This document shows positions 7,385 through 53,163 of a DNA stretch of 64,000 nt, piece by piece. The translations under genes and the position numbers were made by a program. Position 1 is the stretch's first letter. Every line of letters starts with the position of its first letter. The DNA lies in the IMG/VR virus record IMGVR_UViG_3300029922_000001, positions 1 to 64,000 of that record. One strand, given 5' to 3'. The notes beneath the pieces are model-generated. The model was given only the letters and a program-made list of their open reading frames with translations, was not told the origin of the DNA and did no database searches.

Positions 7385-7447
7385 GGTAAAGTACATCCGG
7401 TGATGAACCCGTTCTGTGAAAACGGGTGTGGGGATCGGCTACCCCAC
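7385..7447 (+). pseudogene. truncated tRNA-His(GTG)-like element lacking the 3' acceptor strand
   Basis: D stem CATC/GATG, anticodon arm CCCGTT-CTGTGAA-AACGGG and a T-like hairpin; no complement to the 5' GGTAAAG before CGAGA. Confidence 0.55.
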
Positions 7448-7458
7448 GAGATAAAATA

Positions 7459-7530
7459 TCACAATATGGTGTTATGTTGACATACTTCCTGTGGTGGGAG
7501 AGATGTAAGTTCAATTCTTGCTGTTGTGAC
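7459..7530 (+). tRNA. tRNA-His(GTG)-like, irregular anticodon arm
   Basis: Acceptor TCACAATA/TGTTGTGA; T arm GTAAG-TTCAATT-CTTGC; anticodon region CTTCC-TGTGGT-GGGAG (TGG/Pro reading less likely). Confidence 0.6.
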
Positions 7531-7541
7531 CGAGATATATA

Positions 7542-7607
7542 CTAGGATGCCCAAGGTGGGAATTGCGGTTGTGACCCGCAATGACGGGATCGTTACCCGG
7601 TCCTAGA
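7542..7607 (+). tRNA. tRNA-His(GTG), compact
   Basis: Acceptor CTAGGAT/GTCCTAG; anticodon arm TTGCGG-TTGTGAC-CCGCAA; T arm CGGG-ATCGTTA-CCCG. Confidence 0.7.
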
Positions 7608-7619
7608 CGAGAAAAAAAT

Positions 7620-7701
7620 GGCGTAGCGATGCAGTTGGAGAGGCATGACGGTCTGTAAAATCGTTCCTTCGGGTGAATCGGTTCGAATCCGATATGCGCC
7701 A
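7620..7701 (+). tRNA. tRNA-Tyr(GTA)
   Basis: Anticodon loop CTGTAAA; long variable arm CCTTCGGG; T arm ATCGG-TTCGAAT-CCGAT. Confidence 0.85.
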
Positions 7702-7717
7702 CCGAGATAAAATAAAA

Positions 7718-7789
7718 CGGGATATAGCCAAGTGGTATGGCGCGAAGTTAGGGGCTTCGAGTTCTGGTGTTCGATTCACCATATCCCGA
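7718..7789 (+). tRNA. tRNA-Pro(AGG)
   Basis: Acceptor CGGGATA/TATCCCG plus A73; anticodon arm CGAAG-TTAGGGG-CTTCG; T arm TGGTG-TTCGATT-CACCA. Confidence 0.85.
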
Positions 7790-7800
7790 CGAGAATAAAT

Positions 7801-7880
7801 GGACGTATCGCATAGCGGCAATTGCGGAAGGCTGTAACCCTTCTCCTTCGGGTTCGTAAGTTCGAGTCTTACTGCGTCCA
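7801..7880 (+). tRNA. tRNA-Tyr(GTA)
   Basis: Acceptor GGACGTA/TGCGTCC; anticodon arm GAAGG-CTGTAAC-CCTTC; variable arm CCTTCGGG. Confidence 0.9.
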
Positions 7881-7890
7881 CGAGATAAAT

Positions 7891-7962
7891 CTAGTTGTAT
7901 ATCAATTGGTAGATTTCGCCGTTTGGATCGGTGAGGCTGGAGGTTCGAGTCCTCTCAACTAC
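7891..7962 (+). tRNA. tRNA-Pro(TGG), 3' end lacks G72/A73
   Basis: Anticodon arm CGCCG-TTTGGAT-CGGTG; T arm GGAGG-TTCGAGT-CCTCT; acceptor TAGTTG/CAACTA. Confidence 0.75.
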
Positions 7963-7974
7963 GAGATAAAATAT

Positions 7975-8085
7975 GGCGCGTATAGCAGTTACGGTTTTAC
8001 GGTTAGCTGCGCGGTCTGTTAAGTATGGGTATTTAACAAAACCGATGCCGAAAGGCTGATATGGATTCGACTTCCTCACGCGCCA
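7975..8085 (+). tRNA. type II tRNA-like RNA (probably Tyr) with an 18-nt insertion in the anticodon loop
   Basis: Acceptor GGCGCGT/ACGCGCC plus A; variable arm GCC-GAAA-GGC; anticodon region CGGT-CTGT[18 nt]AAA-ACCG. Confidence 0.6.
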
Positions 8086-8173
8086 CGAGATGTATGACGG
8101 TAATTGGCTGCCGCCTGGTTTTGGAAACCAGAGTTATAAAAATACACTGCAAGTTCGAATCTTGTCATCTCGC
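8086..8173 (+). tRNA. tRNA-Pro(TGG) with long variable region
   Basis: Acceptor CGAGATG/CATCTCG; anticodon arm CTGGT-TTTGGAA-ACCAG; T arm GCAAG-TTCGAAT-CTTGT. Confidence 0.75.
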
Positions 8174-24386: not shown

Positions 24387-24429
24387 AATTATTTTATACA
24401 TTATAAATACGTCAACAAAACCCTTTATA

Positions 24430-24514
24430 ATGAATTACTCTCACGAGTTTCTTGTTTCAATGACGCAACTATTGTTACAGTCTCCGCAAGCGTTTATTCG
24501 GATTATTCCAATCC
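24430..24514 (-). ncRNA. omegaRNA / right end of the TnpB element
   Basis: Minus strand reads GGATT-GGAAT-AATCC...AACGCTTGCGGAG...TGAAACAAGAA...GTAATTCAT, a typical IS200/IS605 3' end. Confidence 0.65.
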
Positions 24515-25627
24515 TATACATCTTATTAAATTTTGATATTGAAATGCCATCTTTTTAATATTAATTGATGCATTGATATCTCTATCGTGTTTAATCCCGC
24601 AAGGACAATTCCATTCACGATCTGATAATTTAAGTTCTTTATTGATCGTTCCACATGAATTACACATTTTAGAACTTGGTTCAAATCTTCCAATATCAAG
24701 CAGATTTTTACCATTCCAATCGCATTTGTATTTAAGAAAATCAAAAAACATTCCCCAAGATACGTCCGAGATTGATTTAGCTAAGCAATGATTTTTTAAC
24801 ATGTTTTTAATTGAAAGGTCTTCAATACAAAAAGTAGTAGCTTGACTCTCACTTACTAATTTTGTTGTAACCTTATGTAAAAAATCACGTCTTTGATTCG
24901 ATATATGCTCATGAATATGAGCAATTCTTTTCTTTTGTTTAGATCCGTTAGATCCTTTTTTCATTTTACTAAACTTATACTGTTCATAAGCTAATTTTTT
25001 TTGAGATTTCTTAAAAAATCTAGGATTATCTATAACCATTCCATCAGAAGTTGTTAAAAATCGAGATAATCCAACATCAATTCCAATTGCATTTTCTATT
25101 TTAAGTTCAGCTTTATTTGGAATGTCAATATTATTTTCAACAAGAACAGAAGCATAATAATGACCAATAGCATTTTTGCTAATAGTTATGGATTTAATGA
25201 TTCCTTCGAATTTTCTATCTATTTTTATTTTAATATGTTTAATTTTAGGTAAAAACAATGTTCGTGTATTCCAATTAATAGAACAAGACTGAGGACATTG
25301 AAATGATTGTTTAGAATTGTGTTTTGATTTAAATTTAGGAAAACCTTTCTTTTCTCTAAAAAATCTAGTATATGCATTATCTAAATTTCTTAATGAAGCT
25401 TGTAGTGATTGTGCATTAACTTCCTTTAACCAAACATTATCTTCCTTTAATTGCTTTAAATTATTTATTAAATCAAAACAAGATAGTGTTTTACTTTCTT
25501 GTTGATATGCTTTAATTTTATTTTCTAATCCCCAGTTGTAAATAAATCTACAAGCCCCAAAATGTTTATTAAACATTTCTTCTTGTTCTTTGTTTGGATA
25601 TATTCTATATTTAAAACCTTTTAACAC
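24503..25627 (-). mobile_element. tnpB: IS200/IS605-family TnpB RNA-guided nuclease (solo, no TnpA)
   Basis: KYRIYPNKEQ HTH; RuvC motifs GIDVG, IEDL and DRDINA intact; Cys-rich Zn finger. Confidence 0.93.
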
Positions 25628-44965: not shown

Positions 44966-45718
44966 ATGAACGACAGAACAAATCTACAAGAAGTTTTTAA
45001 ACAATATTTGCTTAGCAGTAAAGATGGTATTCAATATTGTAAAACAAGAGGAATCACTAAACAAAATGTTTGTGATGGTATTGTCGGTTTGTGTCCTCCG
45101 AGTTATCAATACGGTTATCCGTTAATGCAAGGTAGATTAACAGTCGCCATTCAAGATGTACATGGAACAATTATAGCATTTGCTGGTAGGCAAGCAGATT
45201 GGCTACATGAATTTGTAGATGATCAATTTGTTAAACAAATGGCATTAGAAGATGCACACAAGGCAATCAAATTTTGGGATAAGGCTAAATGGTATAACGA
45301 AGTCTATGATAAGCGTTATCATTTGTTCAATCTCAATAGAGCAAAAGAAAGCATACGTAAAAAGAATTACGCCATTGTTAATGAAGGTTATTTGGATACT
45401 CTCATTTTTAGCAATTACGAAATCGAAAACACTGTTGCAACTTGTGGCACCGCATTAACTGATCACCACATAGGTTTATTAAGTCGTTTTTGCGACAATA
45501 TTGTTGTTATGTACGATCCAGACGTTGCTGGTTCATTAGCTAATGATGAAGCAATTAAGAAGATTGAAAAACGTGGTTTAAAAGCTTTTAGTGTTCAATT
45601 ACCTAGTGGTTATGATCCTGACACTATTGTTATGAAATATGGTGGTGAAAAGATTGGCAAAGCAATTGATAATTTGGTTTACAACAACGAAAAGAAAGTA
45701 TTAAAGGTAAAAGAATGA
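44966..45718 (+). CDS. dnaG: DNA primase catalytic/TOPRIM half (split DnaG)
   Basis: AFAGR, KWYN, EGYLD, GTALT, YDPDVAG and DPD; no Zn finger. Confidence 0.85.
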   Translation: MNDRTNLQEVFKQYLLSSKDGIQYCKTRGITKQNVCDGIVGLCPPSYQYGYPLMQGRLTVAIQDVHGTIIAFAGRQADWLHEFVDDQFVKQMALEDAHKAIKFWDKAKWYNEVYDKRYHLFNLNRAKESIRKKNYAIVNEGYLDTLIFSNYEIENTVATCGTALTDHHIGLLSRFCDNIVVMYDPDVAGSLANDEAIKKIEKRGLKAFSVQLPSGYDPDTIVMKYGGEKIGKAIDNLVYNNEKKVLKVKE

Positions 45719-47451
45719 TTGAAACAAAATGGAATATTAAAGAAGTAGATAGAGAACTAGCAAGAGAATTAGCTTTTGATTTAAGTCTATCCGATGCAGT
45801 CTCTAGACTATGTTTAGTTAGAGGCATTGATTCCGTAGAAGAATTTAATGATTTTACTGATCTGTCATTAAATAAAATGCACAACCCTATGTTGTTGCCT
45901 GATATTAAGCCAGTCGTAAATAGGATCATTCAGGCTTTAGAAAATAAGGAAAAGATTTTTGTGCATGGAGATTATGATGTTGATGGTATAACATCAACTG
46001 CTGTAGTAATTTATACGCTTCGTAAATTAGGGGCTGATTTTAGTTATCATGTACCTCACCGTATAGATGATGGGTATGATATTAAAGAACCCTCAGTGGA
46101 CCGTGCAATACGTGCTGGCGCTAGTTTATTAATCTCTGTAGACTGTGGAATTTTAGCTTTTGGCGCTGCTGAACATGCTAAAGAAAAGGGAATTGATTTA
46201 ATTATCACAGACCATCATACTCCTAAAGATGATGGTAGTATTCCTGATTGTATTGGGGTTGTTAATCCATCTAGATTAGATTCAAAATATCCATTTGCAG
46301 GTTTGGCTGGTGTTGGTATTGCTTTTAAAGTTATGTGTGTATTAGCTGCTAAGTACAAGCAAATTACGCCAAAGGAAATGATTGAGGATCTTGGTGAATT
46401 TGTAGCATTGGGCACTGTTGCTGACGTTGCCCCAATGGTAGATGAAAATAGAATTTTAGTTAGTTATGGATGTAAAAAGTTAACTAACAGCAATAAGCCT
46501 GGTATTCAAGCCTTATTAAAGGTTGCTGGTGTGAAGTCAGTTGACACAACTAGTATTGGATTTCAATTAGGTCCTAGAATCAATGCTATTGGGCGTTTAG
46601 ATGACCCTATACACGCATTAGAGTTGTTATTGACTAGTTCTGAGACTACAGCAAAAAGATTAGCTAATCTATTAGATTCTGCCAATAAAGAACGACAAAA
46701 ACAATTACAACAAGGATTAGAAGAAGCAATAAGTATGGTTCCAACTGATCCAGAAATTTTAAAACAACATAAAATTATTGTTTTATCTGCTGCAAATTGG
46801 CATCCTGGTTTAATTGGTTTAATTGCTGGTAAGATCGCTGAAAAATATGGTAGACCCGCAATGGTTTGCGCCATATTAGCTGAAGGTATTGCAAAGGGTT
46901 CTTGTCGTTCAACTAGAGATTTCCATATTTTAAATGCAATGAAAAGTGAAAAAGTCGCTCCATTATTCAAGAAATTTGGAGGACACGCTTTTGCGGCTGG
47001 ATTTGAAATTCCTGTAAAACAACTTGAAGCGATGCGTTTGAATATTATTGATTATGCCAAAGATAAGTTAGGAGAAGAACACGAAAGCTGTAAAACGGTT
47101 TATGTAGATGCGGAAGTTCAATTTAGCAATATTGATAATCGCTTATATGATGATCTATTACGTTTAGCCCCTTTTGGTGCGCAACATGAAACTCCTGTCT
47201 TTTATACAAAAGGCTTAAAAGTAGCTAAAATTAGTACAGTTGGTACTGATGGTCAACATTTAAAGCTACGTTTAACAAATCAGCGTAATAATTCATATGT
47301 TAACGCTATTTGGTGGAGACACGGTTCATGGGAAGATACACTAAAAGAAGGGCAAACTATTGATATAGCCTATGTACTATCTAAAGAAAACTTCCAAGGG
47401 TTTGAAAATTTGTCATTAATTTTAGAAGATATTAAAATTCCTGTACAATAA
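45715..47451 (+). CDS. recJ: single-stranded DNA exonuclease RecJ
   Basis: GDYDVDG, DCG, TDHH, GTVADV, PRINAIGR, GSCRS and GGHAFAAG. Confidence 0.95.
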   Translation: MIETKWNIKEVDRELARELAFDLSLSDAVSRLCLVRGIDSVEEFNDFTDLSLNKMHNPMLLPDIKPVVNRIIQALENKEKIFVHGDYDVDGITSTAVVIYTLRKLGADFSYHVPHRIDDGYDIKEPSVDRAIRAGASLLISVDCGILAFGAAEHAKEKGIDLIITDHHTPKDDGSIPDCIGVVNPSRLDSKYPFAGLAGVGIAFKVMCVLAAKYKQITPKEMIEDLGEFVALGTVADVAPMVDENRILVSYGCKKLTNSNKPGIQALLKVAGVKSVDTTSIGFQLGPRINAIGRLDDPIHALELLLTSSETTAKRLANLLDSANKERQKQLQQGLEEAISMVPTDPEILKQHKIIVLSAANWHPGLIGLIAGKIAEKYGRPAMVCAILAEGIAKGSCRSTRDFHILNAMKSEKVAPLFKKFGGHAFAAGFEIPVKQLEAMRLNIIDYAKDKLGEEHESCKTVYVDAEVQFSNIDNRLYDDLLRLAPFGAQHETPVFYTKGLKVAKISTVGTDGQHLKLRLTNQRNNSYVNAIWWRHGSWEDTLKEGQTIDIAYVLSKENFQGFENLSLILEDIKIPVQ

Positions 47452-47523
47452 TGGTTAAGAAGTCCTGTTTGCAAAAAAACACAAATATAATAAATATATC
47501 AGTGAATAAAATATTTCAAGACG

Positions 47524-47558
47524 TATAATAATATTGTTATTGCCGAAAGGCGATAACA
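47524..47558 (+). promoter_or_regulatory. -10 box followed by GAAA-tetraloop hairpin
   Basis: TATAAT at 47524-47529; TGTTATTGCC-GAAA-GGCGATAACA. Confidence 0.55.
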
Positions 47559-47560
47559 TA

Positions 47561-47645
47561 GGGCTGGGATAGCCCAAATTAACGCCTTTGGAGTGTGTTC
47601 AACGGAACCACGATGAATTAGGAAGCCGCAATTGTGGTAGTTCAC
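47561..47645 (+). ncRNA. orphan IS200/IS605 omegaRNA/right-end-like element
   Basis: Aligns with the tnpB 3' element (24430-24514) with compensatory changes; ends GTAGTTCAC. Confidence 0.65.
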
Positions 47646-47692
47646 ATATATAATTATTGTGTAAACAATAATTTTGCTCGGAGGACTTTTAC

Positions 47693-48583
47693 ATGGTTAT
47701 ATGCCAAGACGACTTAGAATTAGCTATCATTAGATATCAAAATGCCCTTATAGAAAAAGATAAGCAAAGTATGAATGATTCATACAAGAAGATTTGTGAG
47801 ATTTACAAACCACAACTATATTTACAAACGTGGTTTAAAAAGTACGGTTGGCTTTACGACAGCATGGATGACTTTACACAAGAATATTTGGATGTTTTTT
47901 GCAAAGTCCTAAAAGAATGGAAGCCAAAAGAACAAAGAGGAAAGAGTCGATATAATGGCAAAGGACATTTTAAAAATTATTTCTGGGGATCATTATCAAA
48001 TTATTTTTCCAATGCTGTAAAAAAAGATTCAGCAGCCAAAAGAAATATTCCCTCTATTTGCCCATTATGTAGTGAATATGTTAATGTATTATCTACACAT
48101 TTAGTTGAAAAACATCATGAAATTTTATGGGGTAAATTACATGAACTTGGTATGGATATTAATGTAATTACGACTTGCCCATGTTGTAAATCATTCAAAC
48201 CCAGAAAGGCAGATTTAACCGTCAATGAACAATTAAGACATCATTTATTAAAATTCCACACTAATTTAATATTCGAAAAATTCAAAGAAGATTATCCAGG
48301 TCATGTGACTATTTCCCCAAGAATAACCTCTATTTTTATTGAGTCCGATAATGACGATGATAACATTTGTCTTTATGATGTCACTCCGAAAAGTAACAAT
48401 AAATTAGATTACCTATTGCAGCAAAATCTAAGCGACATACAAGTTAAAATTGTGGAAAAAATACTAAATGGTTCAACCAACATTAAAAAATATTATTTAG
48501 AACTCCAATGTAGTGAAGATGAATTTAATGATGCTTTAGATGGCTTGAAAGATGCATTAATGATCAGTGGTATTTATAATTGA
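47693..48583 (+). CDS. sigma-factor-like regulator with inserted C2H2 zinc fingers
   Basis: Region-2-like DDFTQE...FKNYFW..L.N; CPLC..H....H; CPCC..H....H; region-4-like LSDIQVKIV; GGAGG SD. Confidence 0.55.
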   Translation: MVICQDDLELAIIRYQNALIEKDKQSMNDSYKKICEIYKPQLYLQTWFKKYGWLYDSMDDFTQEYLDVFCKVLKEWKPKEQRGKSRYNGKGHFKNYFWGSLSNYFSNAVKKDSAAKRNIPSICPLCSEYVNVLSTHLVEKHHEILWGKLHELGMDINVITTCPCCKSFKPRKADLTVNEQLRHHLLKFHTNLIFEKFKEDYPGHVTISPRITSIFIESDNDDDNICLYDVTPKSNNKLDYLLQQNLSDIQVKIVEKILNGSTNIKKYYLELQCSEDEFNDALDGLKDALMISGIYN

Positions 48584-49527: not shown

Positions 49528-52500
49528 ATGCAACATGATACGAAAAATAATAAGATGAAAACCATATTTGAAGATTCATTTTCGGAAGAAGTTTGGGCAT
49601 CTACATATAAAGACTATAGAGATAACAGTGTAGATGATACGTTTATGCGAGTAGCAACAGCTATCGCTTCAGTTGAAGAAACTAAAGAATTAAAAGAGTC
49701 TTGGGGAGATTCTTTTTTTGATTTGTTACAAAATTTTAAAGGTTCTGCTGGTGGTAGAATTTTATCAAATGCTGGAACTGAATGGGGTGGCACCACTTTA
49801 ATGAATTGTTTCGTAGGTCCAAAAGCAACTTACGATCAAGACTCTTTAGATGGCATTTTAAAAGTACTTAACAATCAATGTAAAACCTTAAAGTCCGAAG
49901 GTGGTTGGGGAATGAACTTTTCATTCATCCGTCCAAGAGGCGCTTTCATTAACGGAATTGGTGTTGAGTCACCTGGTTCTGTTACTTACATGGAACTTTT
50001 TGATAAGAGTTCAGCTTTAATCACTAGTGGTTCAGGCTTAGATACTAAAAATAAAAAAGCTAAAGGTAAAATCCGTAAAGGCGCTATGATGGGCGTTATG
50101 GATGTTTGGCATCCTGATATTGAAGAATTTATTTCAGCTAAATTAACACCTGGTAGATTATCTAAGTTTAATATTTCCGTAAACTGTTCTGATGAATTCA
50201 TGGAAAAGGTTATCTTCGTTAAGGAACTTAGACTAAGTAAGGCAGATCCTGCCCTTATCGCAGAATATGATAAATGGCATTTGGAATTTCCAGATACCAA
50301 ACATGAAAAATATAAAGAAATTTGGAATGGTGATATCAATTATTGGAAGTCTTTTGGCTACCCTGTTAATATCATAAAGACAGTTTCTGTTACAGAATTA
50401 TGGAATCAAATCATCAAATCCACATATACACGTAATGACCCAGGTGTTTTGTTCTTAGATAGAGCAAATGCAACACACTGTTGGAATTATGGAGGTATTG
50501 AAGCACTCATTAAGGCTACTAATCCATGCGTTACTGAGAATACTTGGATAAATACTTCTAATGGTGCCAAACAAGTAAAACAATTATTAAATGATCCATA
50601 TATTGCTATAGTAAATGGGTTACCATATAATGCAACTAGTTTTTGGGAAACTGGAACTAAAAAGGTTTTCAAATTAAATACAAAACATGGATTTAATATT
50701 GAAGTAACCGATAATCATGTTATCAAAACCACTAAAGGTGACAAGCAATTAAAAGACATAAATATTGGAGACAATATTTTGATATCAAATCATAGAAATC
50801 ACACATGGGTAGGGCAGGGAAATTTCAATAAAGGGTGGTTAATCGGTTCTTTAATTGGTGACGGTCACTTGCTTAGTAAAACATCTAAACTAGAATATTG
50901 GGGTCAAGAAAAAGATATAATGCTTCAATATGCATCACAGCTTATACATAAAGAATTTGACGTTAGAAGTGATTTGGGATCTGGTAATTTATCAGGTAAA
51001 ACGGCACAAGAAAGAGATATTACTTCTTTGAGTTGCACTAATTTATTGAATTATGCACATGAACTGAATATTGATAATGATAAATCGTTAAACAATAGTG
51101 ATATTGAAAAAACATCATATGATTTTTATTGTGGATTTTTATCTGGATGGTTTGATGCTGATGGATCAGTACAAGGCAATCACAAAAAAGGTGTTTCTGT
51201 TAGATTATCTTCATCAATTCAAGAAAACCTTTTAGTTGCACAACGTATGTTAAGCAGATTAGGAATTATTTCAAAAATTTCATTACGAAGAAGCGAACAA
51301 GAAAAATTATTGCCAAATGGCAAAAGTGGAAGTTCATATTATACGTGTAAAGCACAATATGAACTTATAATTAGCCAAGATAATATTTCGGTTTTTAGAA
51401 ATATTATTGGATTCAAGCAACCATCAAAACAAAATCACTTAAACATTTTATTGAATACATATACTAGGAATTTCAATAAACAAAAATTTTATAGTGAAGT
51501 TACTTCTATAGAATATATAGGAGAAGAAAAAGTTTATGATTGTACTGTTGATATTGTTCATGAGTTTTGTGCAAACGGTATAAGAGTTCATAATTGTGGT
51601 GAACAATGTTTACCTTTCGGTGCTGTTTGTAACTTATTCAGCTTTAACTTAACTCAGTTTATTGATGAAGTAAACAATTGCTTCGATCTAGAAAAGCTTC
51701 AAAGATATGTTGCTATTGCTGTTAGATTCTTGGATGATATTAATTCATATACTAACGCACCATTACCTGAATATATCGAATCAATTCGCAAGAGAAGAAG
51801 AATTGGATTGGGTGTTCTTGGTTGGGGAAGTGCATTATATATGCTTAAAACTAGATTTGGTTCTGAAAAGGCTGAAGCTATTAAAGAAAAATTAATGCGT
51901 ACATTCACACATGCTGCTGTTAAGGCATCTATTGATTTGGCTAAAGAAAGAGGTATGTTTGCTGGTTGTGATCCAGAAAAACATGCAAATCATCCATTCT
52001 GGCAACAGATCCAACTTGACGATGATACTCTTAGCGAAATGAGACAATACGGAATTAGAAACTCTGCTCTATTCTCTATTCAACCTACAGGTAATACTTC
52101 TGTTCTATGTAACATCGTTTCTGGTGGTCTAGAACCTGTGTTTATGCCTGAGTATATCAGAACAGTTATTGTCAACTCAGTGCCAAATCATATTAAAAAT
52201 GTAACACCCAAATATTGGGAAGGCGAATTCTTCGAAACATCTTTGTTCAAATTTACAAAAGAAGGTGGAGAACAAATTCTTAGAGGCGTTGATACTGGTG
52301 GAGTTGTTTATAAGATTGACAAAAATAGAGGTTTAACCAGAGAAGTATTATGTGAAGATTATGCTGTTAGACACCTTAAACTCAAGGGTGAATGGGATGC
52401 ATCAGCAGATTGGGCATGTACTACAGATAGTTTAACTGTTAATGACCATCTTACAGACATGAAGGGTTTTGGAAAGTGGATAGATTCATCAATGAGCAAG

Positions 52501-53163
52501 ACTGTTAATGTTCCAAATGATTATCCATTTGAAGATTTCGAAAATGTCTATCTAGATGCTTACAAAACAGGCTGTCTTAAAGGAATTACAACTTATCGTG
52601 CTGGTACAATGACTAATGTCTTGGCTGCAAAATCTGAGAAAGATGAAGAAATTGAATTTAAGACTTCTCCTATCATTAAGCGTCCTAAAGAATTAAAAGC
52701 GAAAGTATTCCATCCAACAGCTAAAGGTGGTAAATTCTACGTTGCAGTTGGGTTATTGAATGATAAACCTTTTGAAGTTTTCGTTGGATTAAACACCACA
52801 AATGTTATTCCAATTAAGATGGATGATGCCTCTATTGTGAAAAGATCCAAGGGAGTGTATGATTTATGTGCAAATTCCTTCTGCTATCCCTTAAATACAC
52901 ACTCTGACGCTAACGTTGATGCATTGACACGTATGGTAAGTTTATCTTTGCACTCTGGAGCTAGTTTAGCTCGTGTTGTCGAACAACTAGAAAGAACTAA
53001 TGGAGATATGTTTGTCTTTGCTAAAGTTCTTGCAAGAACTTTAAAGAGATTCATTCCAGATGGTACTACTTTATCTGAAGAATGTCCAGCTTGTGGTGAA
53101 GCGTTAATTCGCCAAGAAGGTTGTAAACGCTGTACTTCTTGTGATTATAGCGTCTGCGGTTAA
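49528..53163 (+). CDS. nrdJ: class II (B12-dependent) ribonucleotide reductase, intein-containing
   Basis: GGRIL, NCF, GGWG, RKGA, TNP|CGEQ, RRIGLG, QPTG, SKTVN and KGITTYR; C-terminal TSCPD-like domain and Zn ribbon. Confidence 0.92.
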   Translation: MQHDTKNNKMKTIFEDSFSEEVWASTYKDYRDNSVDDTFMRVATAIASVEETKELKESWGDSFFDLLQNFKGSAGGRILSNAGTEWGGTTLMNCFVGPKATYDQDSLDGILKVLNNQCKTLKSEGGWGMNFSFIRPRGAFINGIGVESPGSVTYMELFDKSSALITSGSGLDTKNKKAKGKIRKGAMMGVMDVWHPDIEEFISAKLTPGRLSKFNISVNCSDEFMEKVIFVKELRLSKADPALIAEYDKWHLEFPDTKHEKYKEIWNGDINYWKSFGYPVNIIKTVSVTELWNQIIKSTYTRNDPGVLFLDRANATHCWNYGGIEALIKATNPCVTENTWINTSNGAKQVKQLLNDPYIAIVNGLPYNATSFWETGTKKVFKLNTKHGFNIEVTDNHVIKTTKGDKQLKDINIGDNILISNHRNHTWVGQGNFNKGWLIGSLIGDGHLLSKTSKLEYWGQEKDIMLQYASQLIHKEFDVRSDLGSGNLSGKTAQERDITSLSCTNLLNYAHELNIDNDKSLNNSDIEKTSYDFYCGFLSGWFDADGSVQGNHKKGVSVRLSSSIQENLLVAQRMLSRLGIISKISLRRSEQEKLLPNGKSGSSYYTCKAQYELIISQDNISVFRNIIGFKQPSKQNHLNILLNTYTRNFNKQKFYSEVTSIEYIGEEKVYDCTVDIVHEFCANGIRVHNCGEQCLPFGAVCNLFSFNLTQFIDEVNNCFDLEKLQRYVAIAVRFLDDINSYTNAPLPEYIESIRKRRRIGLGVLGWGSALYMLKTRFGSEKAEAIKEKLMRTFTHAAVKASIDLAKERGMFAGCDPEKHANHPFWQQIQLDDDTLSEMRQYGIRNSALFSIQPTGNTSVLCNIVSGGLEPVFMPEYIRTVIVNSVPNHIKNVTPKYWEGEFFETSLFKFTKEGGEQILRGVDTGGVVYKIDKNRGLTREVLCEDYAVRHLKLKGEWDASADWACTTDSLTVNDHLTDMKGFGKWIDSSMSKTVNVPNDYPFEDFENVYLDAYKTGCLKGITTYRAGTMTNVLAAKSEKDEEIEFKTSPIIKRPKELKAKVFHPTAKGGKFYVAVGLLNDKPFEVFVGLNTTNVIPIKMDDASIVKRSKGVYDLCANSFCYPLNTHSDANVDALTRMVSLSLHSGASLARVVEQLERTNGDMFVFAKVLARTLKRFIPDGTTLSEECPACGEALIRQEGCKRCTSCDYSVCG
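50527..51594 (+). mobile_element. intein with LAGLIDADG endonuclease (356 aa)
   Basis: Begins CVTENT, has a block B TDNH, ends VHN before the catalytic Cys; LIGSLIGDG and FLSGWFDADG motifs. Confidence 0.93.

What the first reader, a model, noticed from the sequence alone, without database searches (positions are those of the whole stretch)
47524..47670. Orphan TnpB omegaRNA-like element with its own promoter, 22 kb from tnpB
Seen: GGGCT-GGGAT-AGCCC-AAATTAACGCCTTTGGAG...TGAATTAGGAAG...GTAGTTCAC aligns with the tnpB 3' element GGATT-GGAAT-AATCC-GAATAAACGCTTGCGGAG...TGAAACAAGAAA...GTAATTCAT, with compensatory stem changes. It follows TATAAT and a GAAA hairpin, has no tnpB remnant, and sits in the 5' region of a sigma-like gene. 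The putative guide is ATATATAATTATTGTGTAAA. Inference: a trans-acting guide that reprograms the phage TnpB (interphage competition or regulation), or a minimal non-autonomous IS605 derivative.
Basis: partly seen in the sequence, partly recalled or inferred. Interest (0 to 1): 0.6.

Follow-up and report, generated by a model that had tools for sequence, protein, structure and literature searches.

The report
Stand-alone TnpB guide-RNA gene in phage
A 441-kb peat phage carries, 22 kb from its TnpB nuclease gene, an intact stand-alone copy of that nuclease's guide-RNA scaffold. A second copy lies elsewhere in the genome. Such TnpB-less copies turn out to be common in phage DNA, and no target for its guide could be found.

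Summary
Window 47558-47645 (+) is an 88-nt TnpB omegaRNA scaffold of the same structural family as the element at the 3' end of tnpB1 (24430-24517, -). A covariance model built only from 50 tnpB-linked copies in other viral contigs scores it 67.6 bits (E 3e-12). All helices are kept, with compensatory changes.

I found a second orphan at genome position 355,893-355,980. TnpB1 resembles ISDra2 TnpB and keeps the RuvC D/E/D triad. The scaffold ends in TTCAC, the right-end motif of ISGst2-type IS200/IS605 elements.

The genome has no Y1 TnpA gene, no family-type left-end hairpin lies near any of the three copies, and there is no tnpB remnant. So this is a solo omegaRNA module, not a complete MITE/PATE.

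The proposed guide has no credible target. Its 20-mer occurs in about 17 unrelated AT-rich metagenomic contexts, and the one phage hit lacks the inferred TAM.

Transcription is not shown, and the TATAAT box has no -35 partner. At least 15 confirmed TnpB-less copies of this family exist in other phage contigs, and omegaRNA-bearing PATEs used in trans are already in the literature.

Most likely it is loaded in trans by TnpB1 and specifies the element-free form of its own site. Interest is moderate.

The parts
47558..47645 (+). Orphan omegaRNA scaffold 1 (88 nt). It has hairpin P1, a kink-turn-like core (P2/P3 with an inner hairpin) and hairpin P4, and ends in GTTCAC (the TEM).
   Evidence: R1 scores it 90.6 bits. 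The independent model R2 scores it 67.6 bits, E 2.9e-12. Pair counts are and the single-sequence fold.
47585..47624 (+). Core resembling Rfam RAGATH-18 (GGAG ... GAUGAA ... AGGAA), with a much shorter central stem.
   Evidence: RF03064 scores 24.6 bits, E 0.013, below its gathering score of 44.9. None of 16 related loci reaches the gathering score.
47646..47665 (+). Putative 20-nt guide, which is the DNA flanking the right-end boundary. Similarity among all copies stops exactly here.
   Evidence: Alignments. No credible target was found.
47652..47673 (+). AU-rich 9-bp hairpin with loop GUAA, followed by UU. It overlaps the 3' two thirds of the putative guide. It may be a weak terminator or a 3' protective stem.
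   Evidence: Fold. It is not called a terminator by the consensus scan.
47536..47557 (+). 5' hairpin: a 9-bp stem with a GAAA tetraloop, directly before the scaffold.
   Evidence: The second orphan has an unrelated 6-bp stem with the same GAAA loop at the same place. Orphans L144 and L164 in other phage contigs also have TATAAT, then a hairpin, then the scaffold.
47524..47529 (+). Perfect -10 hexamer TATAAT, 6 nt before the 5' hairpin. It is a possible promoter but unproven.
   Evidence: There is no -35 partner at 16-18 nt (3 of 6 at best). The same TATAATAATA-hairpin layout occurs in L144 and L164.
47454..47467 (+). GTTAA followed by GAAGTCCTG, directly after the RecJ stop codon. It resembles the inferred TAM-to-left-end junction of relative L061. 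It may be a degenerate left boundary of the insertion.
   Evidence: The 9-of-9 nt match is not significant in shuffles (p about 0.3), so this is a lead only.
24503..25627 (-). tnpB1, 374 aa with a GTG start. It is the probable protein partner.
   Evidence: Pfam OrfB_IS605, HTH_OrfB_IS605 and Cas12f1-like_TNB. Match to ISDra2 TnpB (8bf8/8exa) at E 1e-70, with D191, E278 and D361 aligned to D, E and D.
24430..24517 (-). tnpB1-linked omegaRNA scaffold. It overlaps the last 15 nt of the reading frame, stop codon included, and ends in ATTCAT.
   Evidence: R1 105 bits and R2 78 bits. The same position relative to tnpB is seen in 48 of 80 related loci.
24410..24429 (-). Flank-derived guide of the tnpB1-linked omegaRNA.
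   Evidence: Similarity to relatives ends at 24430.
47693..48583 (+). Downstream ORF (296 aa), possibly sigma-factor-like. RBS GGAGG lies at 47680-47684.
   Evidence: No Pfam or PHROGs hit. Atlas lead to Sigma70_r2. The RecJ-ORF296 synteny is kept in three related jumbo phages that lack the element.

Best explanation
Window 47558-47645 is a stand-alone gene for a TnpB omegaRNA (reRNA). It is the right-end/scaffold module of an ISDra2/ISGst2-type IS200/IS605 element, without tnpB, without a recognisable left end and without any TnpA gene in the phage.

**Proposed working (inferred).**
1. The RNA is transcribed on the same strand as RecJ and ORF296, either from the TATAAT at 47524 or by read-through.
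2. TnpB1, made from the gene 22 kb away, binds the 88-nt scaffold in trans, as it binds its own 3' element.
3. The adjacent 16-20 nt serve as the guide.
4. That guide is simply the DNA next to the right-end boundary, so the RNP specifies the element-free form of this site: a TTTAA/TTTAT-type TAM followed by the flank.
5. Its most likely effect is therefore selfish. It would cut co-infecting relatives that lack the insert and be copied in by repair. This is TnpA-independent 'non-restorative homing', with co-conversion of the neighbouring RecJ and sigma-like genes. It is not a guide aimed at a foreign gene.

**Shown:** family membership, intact structure, an intact cognate nuclease, the boundary at TTCAC, and the absence of TnpA, a left-end hairpin and tnpB remnants.

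**Inferred:** transcription, loading by TnpB1, the TAM and the homing outcome.
For: **Family membership and structure.**
- Three and only three family members exist in the genome.
- Family structure: 21 of 21 pairs covary across 43 distinct tnpB-linked copies, with 95.9% of cells paired.
- The orphans keep the helices through compensatory changes despite 59-72% identity to each other and to the tnpB1 copy.

**The protein partner.**
- TnpB1 has an intact RuvC triad and resembles ISDra2 TnpB.
- The tnpB1 element is itself an insertion. Similarity to relatives runs only from about 51 nt upstream of the start codon to the TTCAY end, at non-syntenic sites.

**Boundary and TAM.**
- The orphan scaffolds and those of the near relatives end in TTCAC, which is the TEM of ISGst2, whose TAM is TTTAT (PMC10055086); the tnpB1-linked copy ends in TTCAT.
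- Left-end-bearing relatives show TTTAA, TTTAT, ATTAA or GTTAA 13-17 nt before the left-end hairpin.

**Orientation.** Both orphans lie in non-coding DNA and point the same way as their flanking genes.

**Precedent in the literature.**
- PATEs 'often encode omegaRNAs' that TnpB would need to act on in trans (PMC10055086).
- TnpB-dependent, TnpA-independent spread of IS605 has been reported (PMC13565253).

**Recurrence elsewhere.**
- At least 15 R2-confirmed copies without an adjacent TnpB1-like gene occur in other phage contigs.
- They include two in a 132-kb phage that carries four to five TnpB genes.
Against: - No RNA evidence. Metatranscriptome contigs cover only ORF296, not the element, and they could be DNA carry-over.
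- The TATAAT has no -35 partner.
- The TAM is inferred from a few relatives. The left boundary of the orphan is not defined, and the GTTAA/GAAG junction match is not significant.
- No empty-site allele or diverged close relative was found, so neither homing nor selection on the orphan in this lineage is demonstrated.
- The three copies could be separate, recent insertions of already diverged family members. Intact helices would then say nothing about selection here.
- Most of the putative guide can fold into a hairpin.
Confidence: 0.5

Rival explanations
1. Inert relic. The orphans are leftovers of IS200/IS605 copies whose tnpB and left end were deleted. They are still intact only because they are young, and they have no role.
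For: - Internal-deletion derivatives of this family are seen directly in other phage contigs. L159 keeps the left end and the first codons of tnpB, and L152/L167 keep the left-end hairpin and the last codons.
- Orphans are common.
- No target, no RNA evidence and no TnpA were found.
- P1 of orphan 2 has two non-standard pairs.
Against: - Both orphans start at exactly the same scaffold position (ATAGGG) with no tnpB codons upstream. Each is preceded by a different stem carrying the same GAAA loop, which random deletions would not give twice.
- Their scores under the independent model (64-68 bits) are as high as many tnpB-linked copies.
- An intact scaffold transcribed in a cell that makes TnpB1 would probably be bound whether or not it is 'meant' to be.
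Confidence: 0.3
2. Trans-acting defence or competition guide. The guide has been selected to hit a competitor phage, a host gene or a phage promoter.
For: - There is an exact 20-of-20 match in a LAGLIDADG endonuclease gene of 26%-GC, TAG-recoded jumbo-phage contigs.
- The reversed control 20-mer gave no hit.
- Close TnpB homologs with mini CRISPR-like arrays (L019, L026) show that this clade can take guides from elsewhere.
Against: - The same 20-mer occurs in about 17 unrelated metagenomic contexts.
- The phage hit is preceded by ATGAA, not a TTTAA/TTTAT-type TAM.
- Orphan 2's GC-richer guide matches nothing in viral contigs or 185,579 genomes.
- There is no self match beyond chance.
- The guide is contiguous with the insertion flank, as in any IS right end.
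Confidence: 0.08
3. Complete MITE/PATE, mobilised by a host TnpA, whose left end is too degenerate or AT-rich to recognise.
For: - GTTAA plus GAAGTCCTG directly after the RecJ stop resembles TAM-to-left-end junctions of relatives.
- An ATTGCC-GAAAG string in the 5' hairpin recurs downstream of the left-end hairpin in PATE L102 and in L138.
- A true PATE of this family exists in phage G005 (L102).
- The intergenic region is about 120 nt longer than in two of three relatives.
Against: - No hairpin followed by a TGAATT-type motif lies near any of the three copies.
- P4, the TnpA-recognised right-end hairpin, is only 4 bp here against 8-9 bp in the nearest relatives.
- The phage has no Y1 TnpA.
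- The left-end similarity is not significant.
Confidence: 0.1
4. Cis-acting leader. The structured RNA is the 5' UTR of the sigma-like gene and controls its expression or stability, with or without TnpB binding.
For: - It lies 47 nt upstream of the start codon on the same strand, with a TATAAT before it and an RBS after it.
- The tnpB1 right end also lies 28 nt before a co-oriented gene.
Against: - Three relatives keep the RecJ-ORF296 pair without any such element.
- The second orphan is about 500 nt from the next ORF.
- The sequence belongs to a transposon RNA family.
Confidence: 0.02

Closest known systems
TnpB omegaRNA/reRNA of IS200/IS605 elements (ISDra2; ISGst2 of Geobacillus stearothermophilus)
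   Same: - TnpB1 matches ISDra2 TnpB over its full length at E 1e-70.
- The scaffold lies at the right end, and the guide is the flank.
- The orphan scaffolds end in TTCAC, the TEM reported for ISGst2; the tnpB1-linked copy ends in TTCAT.
- The structure is supported by covariation.
   Different: - This copy is not at the 3' end of a tnpB gene.
- The scaffold found here is only 88 nt, with very short P4 and central stems.
- It has its own 5' hairpin and a -10 box.
PATEs (palindrome-associated transposable elements) that encode omegaRNAs
   Same: - No protein-coding gene.
- Carries the omegaRNA/right end.
- Would need TnpB supplied in trans, as stated in PMC10055086.
- A genuine PATE of this RNA family occurs in phage G005 (L102).
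   Different: - No left-end hairpin was found.
- No TnpA gene is in the genome.
- The right-end hairpin is reduced to 4 bp, so mobilisation by TnpA is doubtful.
- The setting is a 441-kb phage rather than a bacterial or archaeal chromosome.
RAGATH-18-derived reRNA of IS607 TnpB (ISFba1; Ren et al. 2024, PMC11061315)
   Same: - The core motif GGAG...GAUGAA...AGGAA, with the same nested helices, gives a weak Rfam hit.
- In that study 36% of RAGATH-18 RNAs were not next to an IS607 TnpB.
   Different: - The score is far below the gathering threshold, and no relative reaches it.
- The protein is closer to ISDra2 TnpB than to the next-ranked 384-aa TnpB-like chain, 8iaz.
- The ISFba1 scaffold is 174 nt and its TAM is AGGAG.
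TranC / early type V CRISPR (omegaRNA split into tracrRNA and crRNA) and orphan CRISPR arrays in jumbo phages
   Same: - Guides are encoded away from the nuclease gene.
- TnpB homologs at 52-54% identity (L019, L026) have repeat-spacer arrays upstream and an omegaRNA-like scaffold downstream.
   Different: - Here each extra guide carries a complete scaffold.
- There are no direct repeats, and there is no sign of an acquisition system.
TldR (nuclease-dead TnpB repressors) with adjacent guide RNAs
   Same: A TnpB-family protein using a guide for a non-transposon purpose, with a guide region lying in a promoter-proximal position.
   Different: - TnpB1 keeps D, E and D.
- The guide RNA is not adjacent to the gene.
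- No promoter target elsewhere was found.

Membership tests
TnpB omegaRNA (IS200/IS605, ISDra2/ISGst2 type) | Conserved scaffold secondary structure shared with tnpB-linked copies | tested here: met
   R2, built without the window's copies, scores it 67.6 bits at E 2.9e-12. Family covariation covers 21 of 21 pairs. Among the own copies, 9 of 21 pairs show compensatory changes.
TnpB omegaRNA (IS200/IS605, ISDra2/ISGst2 type) | Encoded at, and overlapping, the 3' end of a tnpB gene | tested here: not met
   The nearest TnpB-like coding sequence is 21.9 kb away. There are no tnpB codons upstream of 47558. The tnpB1-linked copy does meet this feature.
TnpB omegaRNA (IS200/IS605, ISDra2/ISGst2 type) | Scaffold ends at the right-end boundary (TEM), followed by a variable guide | tested here: met
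   Similarity among the three own copies and the relatives stops after TTCAC/TTCAT. TTCAC is the ISGst2 TEM.
TnpB omegaRNA (IS200/IS605, ISDra2/ISGst2 type) | A cognate, catalytically intact TnpB is available | tested here: met
   tnpB1 is an open frame of 374 aa, and D191, E278 and D361 of ISDra2 TnpB align to D, E and D.
TnpB omegaRNA (IS200/IS605, ISDra2/ISGst2 type) | Transcribed and bound by TnpB, and guides TAM-dependent cleavage | not testable with these tools
   Only assembled contigs of RNA libraries were available, and none lies on the element.
PATE / MITE-like non-autonomous IS200/IS605 | Left end with a subterminal hairpin like that of the right end | tested here: not met
   A hairpin-plus-TGAATT scan of the genome finds nothing near 24.5, 47.5 or 355.9 kb. 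The upstream similarity to relatives' left ends is not significant. The scan was crude, so a degenerate left end is not excluded.
PATE / MITE-like non-autonomous IS200/IS605 | Right-end hairpin competent for TnpA recognition | tested here: inconclusive
   P4 is present but only 4 bp, against 8-9 bp in L013, L014, L015 and L017.
PATE / MITE-like non-autonomous IS200/IS605 | A Y1 TnpA is available to mobilise it | tested here: not met
   PF01797 has no match in the 441-kb genome, while the control genomes do match. A host-encoded TnpA cannot be checked.
PATE / MITE-like non-autonomous IS200/IS605 | Insertion 3' of the TAM, and empty-site alleles in relatives | tested here: inconclusive
   GTTAA lies at 47454-47458, but the boundary is unproven. 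Relatives lack the element, yet their intergenic DNA cannot be aligned. Other samples hold the identical allele.
Rfam RAGATH-18 (RF03064) | Score at or above the family's gathering threshold | tested here: not met
   24.6 bits against 44.9. Nothing else in the genome reaches it, nor does any of 16 related loci.
CRISPR array / TranC-type split guide | Direct repeats separated by spacers | tested here: not met
   The genome holds only three dispersed single copies, each with a full scaffold. No repeat finder was run on the locus itself.
TldR guide RNA | The partner protein lacks RuvC catalytic residues | tested here: not met
   The catalytic D, E and D are conserved in TnpB1.

The most novel reading that the evidence does not exclude
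The phage keeps dispersed, self-promoted, stand-alone omegaRNA genes as a small multi-guide repertoire for a single TnpB. There are at least two, each with a 5' GAAA-loop hairpin. This would be a repeat-free alternative to a CRISPR array. Each RNA would mark its own locus, so that TnpB drives those loci, including the neighbouring RecJ and sigma-like genes, into co-infecting relatives. That would amount to RNA-guided marker exclusion in jumbo phages.
Probability: 0.22. Interest if true: 0.7.

Novelty: new variant of a known kind. Interest (0 to 1): 0.45.

Why it matters
If TnpB1 really loads these solo RNAs, a phage nuclease would be served by several guide genes scattered over 330 kb. That arrangement sits between the one-gene-one-guide transposon and a CRISPR array. 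It would also give phages an RNA-programmed counterpart of free-standing homing endonucleases.

The 88-nt scaffold is unusually small for an ISDra2-like TnpB, which may interest people who build compact genome editors.

In practice, the survey shows that TnpB-less omegaRNA copies of this family are frequent in phage contigs. Annotation pipelines that look for omegaRNAs only behind tnpB genes will miss them.

If the copies are inert relics, the finding is routine transposon decay.

Tried and rejected
- **Rfam at gathering thresholds.** Only tRNAs in the window. Relaxed scans gave the weak RAGATH-18 hit for orphan 1 only.
- **BLAST against the phage collection.** Nothing for the orphan region and only distant tnpB matches.
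- **Sigma-like protein pattern search in IMG/VR.** Nothing found. Relatives were reached through genome handles instead.
- **Guide targets.**
  - Own genome: only chance-level matches.
  - Orphan 1 20-mer: hits in four viral contigs looked interesting, since they fall in a LAGLIDADG gene and the reversed control gave none. I rejected them after the metagenome scan gave about 17 unrelated contexts and because the 5' flank ATGAA does not fit the inferred TAM.
  - Orphan 2 20-mer: no hit in viral or genome collections.
  - Three of the four target contigs are not held for whole-record searches.
- **Empty-site test.** The relatives' intergenic DNA cannot be aligned.
- **Left-end search.** A hairpin-motif scan and shuffled local alignments gave no significant left end.
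- **Reads.** Only contigs were available. They were identical in two other peat samples, and none from RNA libraries lay over the element.
- **Upstream stem in tnpB-linked copies.** I looked for a conserved stem matching the orphans' 5' hairpin and found none.
- **Subfamily pattern scan.** The GGGA-loop pattern found only one more contig.

Full report
**Where the window lies.** The window is the first 64 kb of a 441,498-bp IMG/VR virus record with 34% G+C, rated complete. Its DNA occurs in several peat metagenomes. The genome encodes 24 tRNAs, a tmRNA and three TnpB homologs.

**The observation.**
- TATAAT lies at 47524-47529.
- A 9-bp hairpin with a GAAA loop lies at 47536-47557.
- An 88-nt block from ATAGGG to GTTCAC lies at 47558-47645.
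- The 20 nt proposed as guide follow at 47646-47665.
- The block lies between a RecJ-like gene (45715-47451) and a 296-aa ORF (47693-48583).
- The tnpB gene is 24503-25627 on the minus strand, with Pfam OrfB_IS605, HTH_OrfB_IS605 and Cas12f1-like TNB domains.
- Its 3' element is 24430-24517 on the minus strand and overlaps the stop codon.

**Is the resemblance real?** Identity between the orphan and the tnpB1 element is only 59%, and BLAST did not join them. BLAST did reveal a third copy at genome 355,893-355,980, which is 72% identical to each of the other two.

I hand-derived a four-helix structure: P1, an outer core helix, an inner core helix with a hairpin, and P4. I modelled it as R1. R1 finds only these three places in the genome.

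R1 also hits the 3' end of the TnpB homolog in 48 of 80 related viral loci. On those 43 distinct sequences, 95.9% of pair cells are standard pairs and all 21 pairs show changes on both sides. Slid controls gave 34-44% paired, although that alignment was fitted to the model.

A second model, R2, was built only from those foreign tnpB-linked copies. It scores the tnpB1 element at 78 bits, the orphan at 67.6 bits (E 2.9e-12) and the second orphan at 64 bits, and nothing else in 441 kb. Among the three own copies, 93% of cells pair and 9 of 21 pairs carry compensatory double changes, with no shuffle of 500 reaching this.

So both the observation and the claim of compensatory stem changes are confirmed.

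**Which family is it?**
- TnpB1 aligns over its full length with ISDra2 TnpB (8bf8/8exa, E 1e-70). The catalytic D191, E278 and D361 are matched by D, E and D, so it should be an active nuclease and not a TldR-type repressor.
- The RNA core gives a weak Rfam hit to RAGATH-18 (24.6 bits against a threshold of 44.9). RAGATH-18 is the scaffold core of IS607 TnpB guide RNAs (PMC11061315).
- Neither the other two copies nor any of 16 related loci reach that threshold. The likeness is therefore a shared core motif, not membership.
- The orphan scaffolds and those of the near relatives end in TTCAC; the tnpB1-linked copy ends in TTCAT. TTCAC is the transposon-encoded motif (TEM) at the right end of ISGst2, whose TAM is TTTAT (PMC10055086).
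- In relatives that still have a left end, TTTAA, TTTAT, ATTAA or GTTAA lies 13-17 nt before the left-end hairpin. I take a TTTAA/TTTAT-type TAM as the working inference.

**Transposon or fixture?**
- The tnpB1 unit is itself an insertion. Similarity to the closest homologs (75% and 72% protein identity, in jumbo phages of 479 and 379 kb) runs only from about 51 nt before the start codon to the TTCAY end. The flanks are unrelated.
- The family-type left-end hairpin is missing upstream of tnpB1, although several relatives have it.
- A genome-wide scan for a hairpin followed by a TGAATT-type motif finds none near any of the three copies.
- The genome has no Y1 transposase (PF01797; the control genomes were positive).
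- P4, which in IS200/IS605 doubles as the TnpA-recognised right-end hairpin, is only 4 bp in all three copies, against 8-9 bp in the nearest relatives.

The orphans therefore fail the left-end test for a complete PATE/MITE and are better called solo omegaRNA modules.

A faint trace of a left boundary exists. GTTAA at 47454-47458, directly after the RecJ stop, is followed by GAAGTCCTG. This resembles the junction in relative L061, but it is not significant (p about 0.3).

**The empty-site test.** Three related jumbo phages keep the RecJ-ORF296 pair at 40-56% protein identity. They have no family member there, and in two of them the spacer is about 120 nt shorter. The DNA cannot be aligned, however, so no exact empty site can be defined.

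**The guide.** The proposed guide is simply the DNA next to the right-end boundary, as in every IS200/IS605 element.
- It has no better-than-chance match in its own genome.
- Its exact 20-mer occurs in four viral contigs at one locus, a LAGLIDADG endonuclease gene with in-frame TAG codons in 26%-GC jumbo-phage DNA. A reversed control found nothing.
- The metagenome scan, however, returned the 20-mer in about 17 unrelated AT-rich contexts besides the source contig.
- The phage hit is preceded by ATGAA, not the inferred TAM.
- I therefore treat the match as chance.
- The GC-richer guide of the second orphan matches nothing in the viral or genome collections.

**Expression.**
- The TATAAT has no -35 partner in the consensus scan.
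- Two orphans of the same family in unrelated phage contigs (L144, L164) show the same order: TATAATAATA, then a hairpin, then the scaffold. This makes a promoter with a 5'-terminal protective stem plausible.
- The second orphan has the GAAA-loop hairpin but no TATAAT.
- Both orphans point the same way as their neighbours, so read-through transcription would also supply them.
- Public runs gave only assembled contigs. Two other peat samples hold the identical DNA. The two RNA-library contigs lie on ORF296 only. Transcription of the element is therefore not shown.

**How unusual is it?**
- Meers et al. already noted that PATEs often encode omegaRNAs that TnpB proteins encoded elsewhere would need to act on in trans (PMC10055086).
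- Ren et al. found 36% of RAGATH-18 RNAs away from an IS607 TnpB.
- A degenerate core pattern found 36 places in IMG/VR. Of these, 13 lie next to a TnpB1-like gene, and at least 15 R2-confirmed copies (41-82 bits) have none adjacent.
- Those TnpB-less copies include clear internal-deletion derivatives (L159, L152/L167), a true PATE (L102 in a 215-kb phage) and tandem copies (L169).
- They also include two orphans in a 132-kb phage with four to five TnpB genes. One of them (L146) is the only other viral contig sharing orphan 1's P1-loop signature, and its core closely resembles orphan 1's.
- The kind is therefore known. The variant here is a left-end-less, TnpA-less, miniaturised module with its own 5' hairpin, in a jumbo phage.

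**Verdict.** Identity as an orphan omegaRNA scaffold is near certain. The most likely working is loading in trans by TnpB1, with the flank-derived guide specifying the insert-free form of its own site. That would favour retention and spread into co-infecting relatives, as in TnpA-independent non-restorative homing (PMC13565253). This part is inference, and I put it at about 0.5. An inert young relic stands at about 0.3.

Noticed in passing
G000 genome 355,893-355,980 (+), outside the window; locus L002:1504-1591: A second orphan omegaRNA scaffold of the same family (R2 64 bits). It is preceded by a 6-bp hairpin with a GAAA loop. Its guide would start TGGGCACCCATGCGAATTAA, and no target was found for it.
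   Followed up: yes
G000 genome about 354,990-356,510 (L002:600-2120); also window 7446-8092: A 1.5-kb stretch with no ORF of 60 aa or more on the + strand, even if TAG is read as sense. It is full of short hairpins, each followed by (A)CGAGAT(T), plus four TTCTCGAAAA...CCGAGA units. Orphan 2 sits between two such modules. The same GAGAT motif directly follows several tRNA genes in the window's tRNA cluster and in other tRNA clusters. It may be a 3'-processing signal shared by tRNAs and a polycistronic non-coding RNA locus. There are no Rfam matches.
   Followed up: partly
G000 genome 172,128-172,200 and 353,602-353,673; tmRNA at 293,574-293,927: ARAGORN calls two tRNAs with anticodon CUA (amber suppressors) and a tmRNA. 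The phage may read TAG as sense in part of its genome. The genetic code was not tested further.
   Followed up: no
L019 (IMGVR_UViG_3300010281_000249) and L026 (IMGVR_UViG_3300049641_000505), about 30-250 nt upstream of the TnpB homolog starts at L019:3001 and L026:3001: At least three copies of a 37-38-nt direct repeat (GTGCGGATGATAGATACAGGGAAATTATCATAGTACCT), separated by unique spacers of 33-36 nt, lie directly upstream of TnpB homologs (54% and 52% identity to TnpB1). Those homologs also have an omegaRNA-like scaffold downstream. This is a TnpB-CRISPR intermediate (TranC-like) layout.
   Followed up: partly
L102:1418-1627 (G005, 215-kb phage; R1 hit at G005:43319-43445): A complete PATE of this family: ATTAA, then a left-end hairpin, then the omegaRNA scaffold and a right end finishing in TTCAT, with no tnpB. 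The left and right hairpins are near-identical in their loops.
   Followed up: partly
L144:1613-1705 and L164:402-497 (both minus strand in the stored loci): An omegaRNA scaffold preceded by TATAATAATA and a hairpin lies upstream of, not behind, a TnpB homolog on the same strand.
   Followed up: partly
L169:7836-7932 (-) and the sequence just 5' of it: A right-end terminus (…TGTTCAC) is followed after about 6 nt by another full scaffold. These are tandem right-end/omegaRNA units.
   Followed up: no
L112:4770-5800 (also L109-L111 and L119): A LAGLIDADG-type homing-endonuclease gene with five in-frame TAG codons occurs in 26%-GC jumbo-phage contigs of 314-547 kb, so those phages appear to recode TAG. 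The 14-kb fragment G006 also carries a weak tnpB-less omegaRNA-like hit (L113, 27 bits).
   Followed up: partly
G000 genome 177,149-178,210 (+) and 283,265-283,843 (-): Two further TnpB homologs (36% and 29% identity to TnpB1). Their 3' regions are not matched by the R1 or R2 models, so they presumably use other omegaRNA classes.
   Followed up: partly
window 24402-24429 (-) and 47646-47692 (+): The tnpB1 right end and orphan 1 both lie just upstream (28 and 47 nt) of the start codon of a co-oriented gene. In both cases the flank-derived guides cover promoter-proximal or 5'-UTR DNA containing TATAAT-like strings.
   Followed up: no
window 49528-53163 (+): A 1,211-aa ribonucleotide reductase large subunit matches its PHROG in two separated stretches. 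That could indicate an inserted element such as an intein. This was not examined.
   Followed up: no
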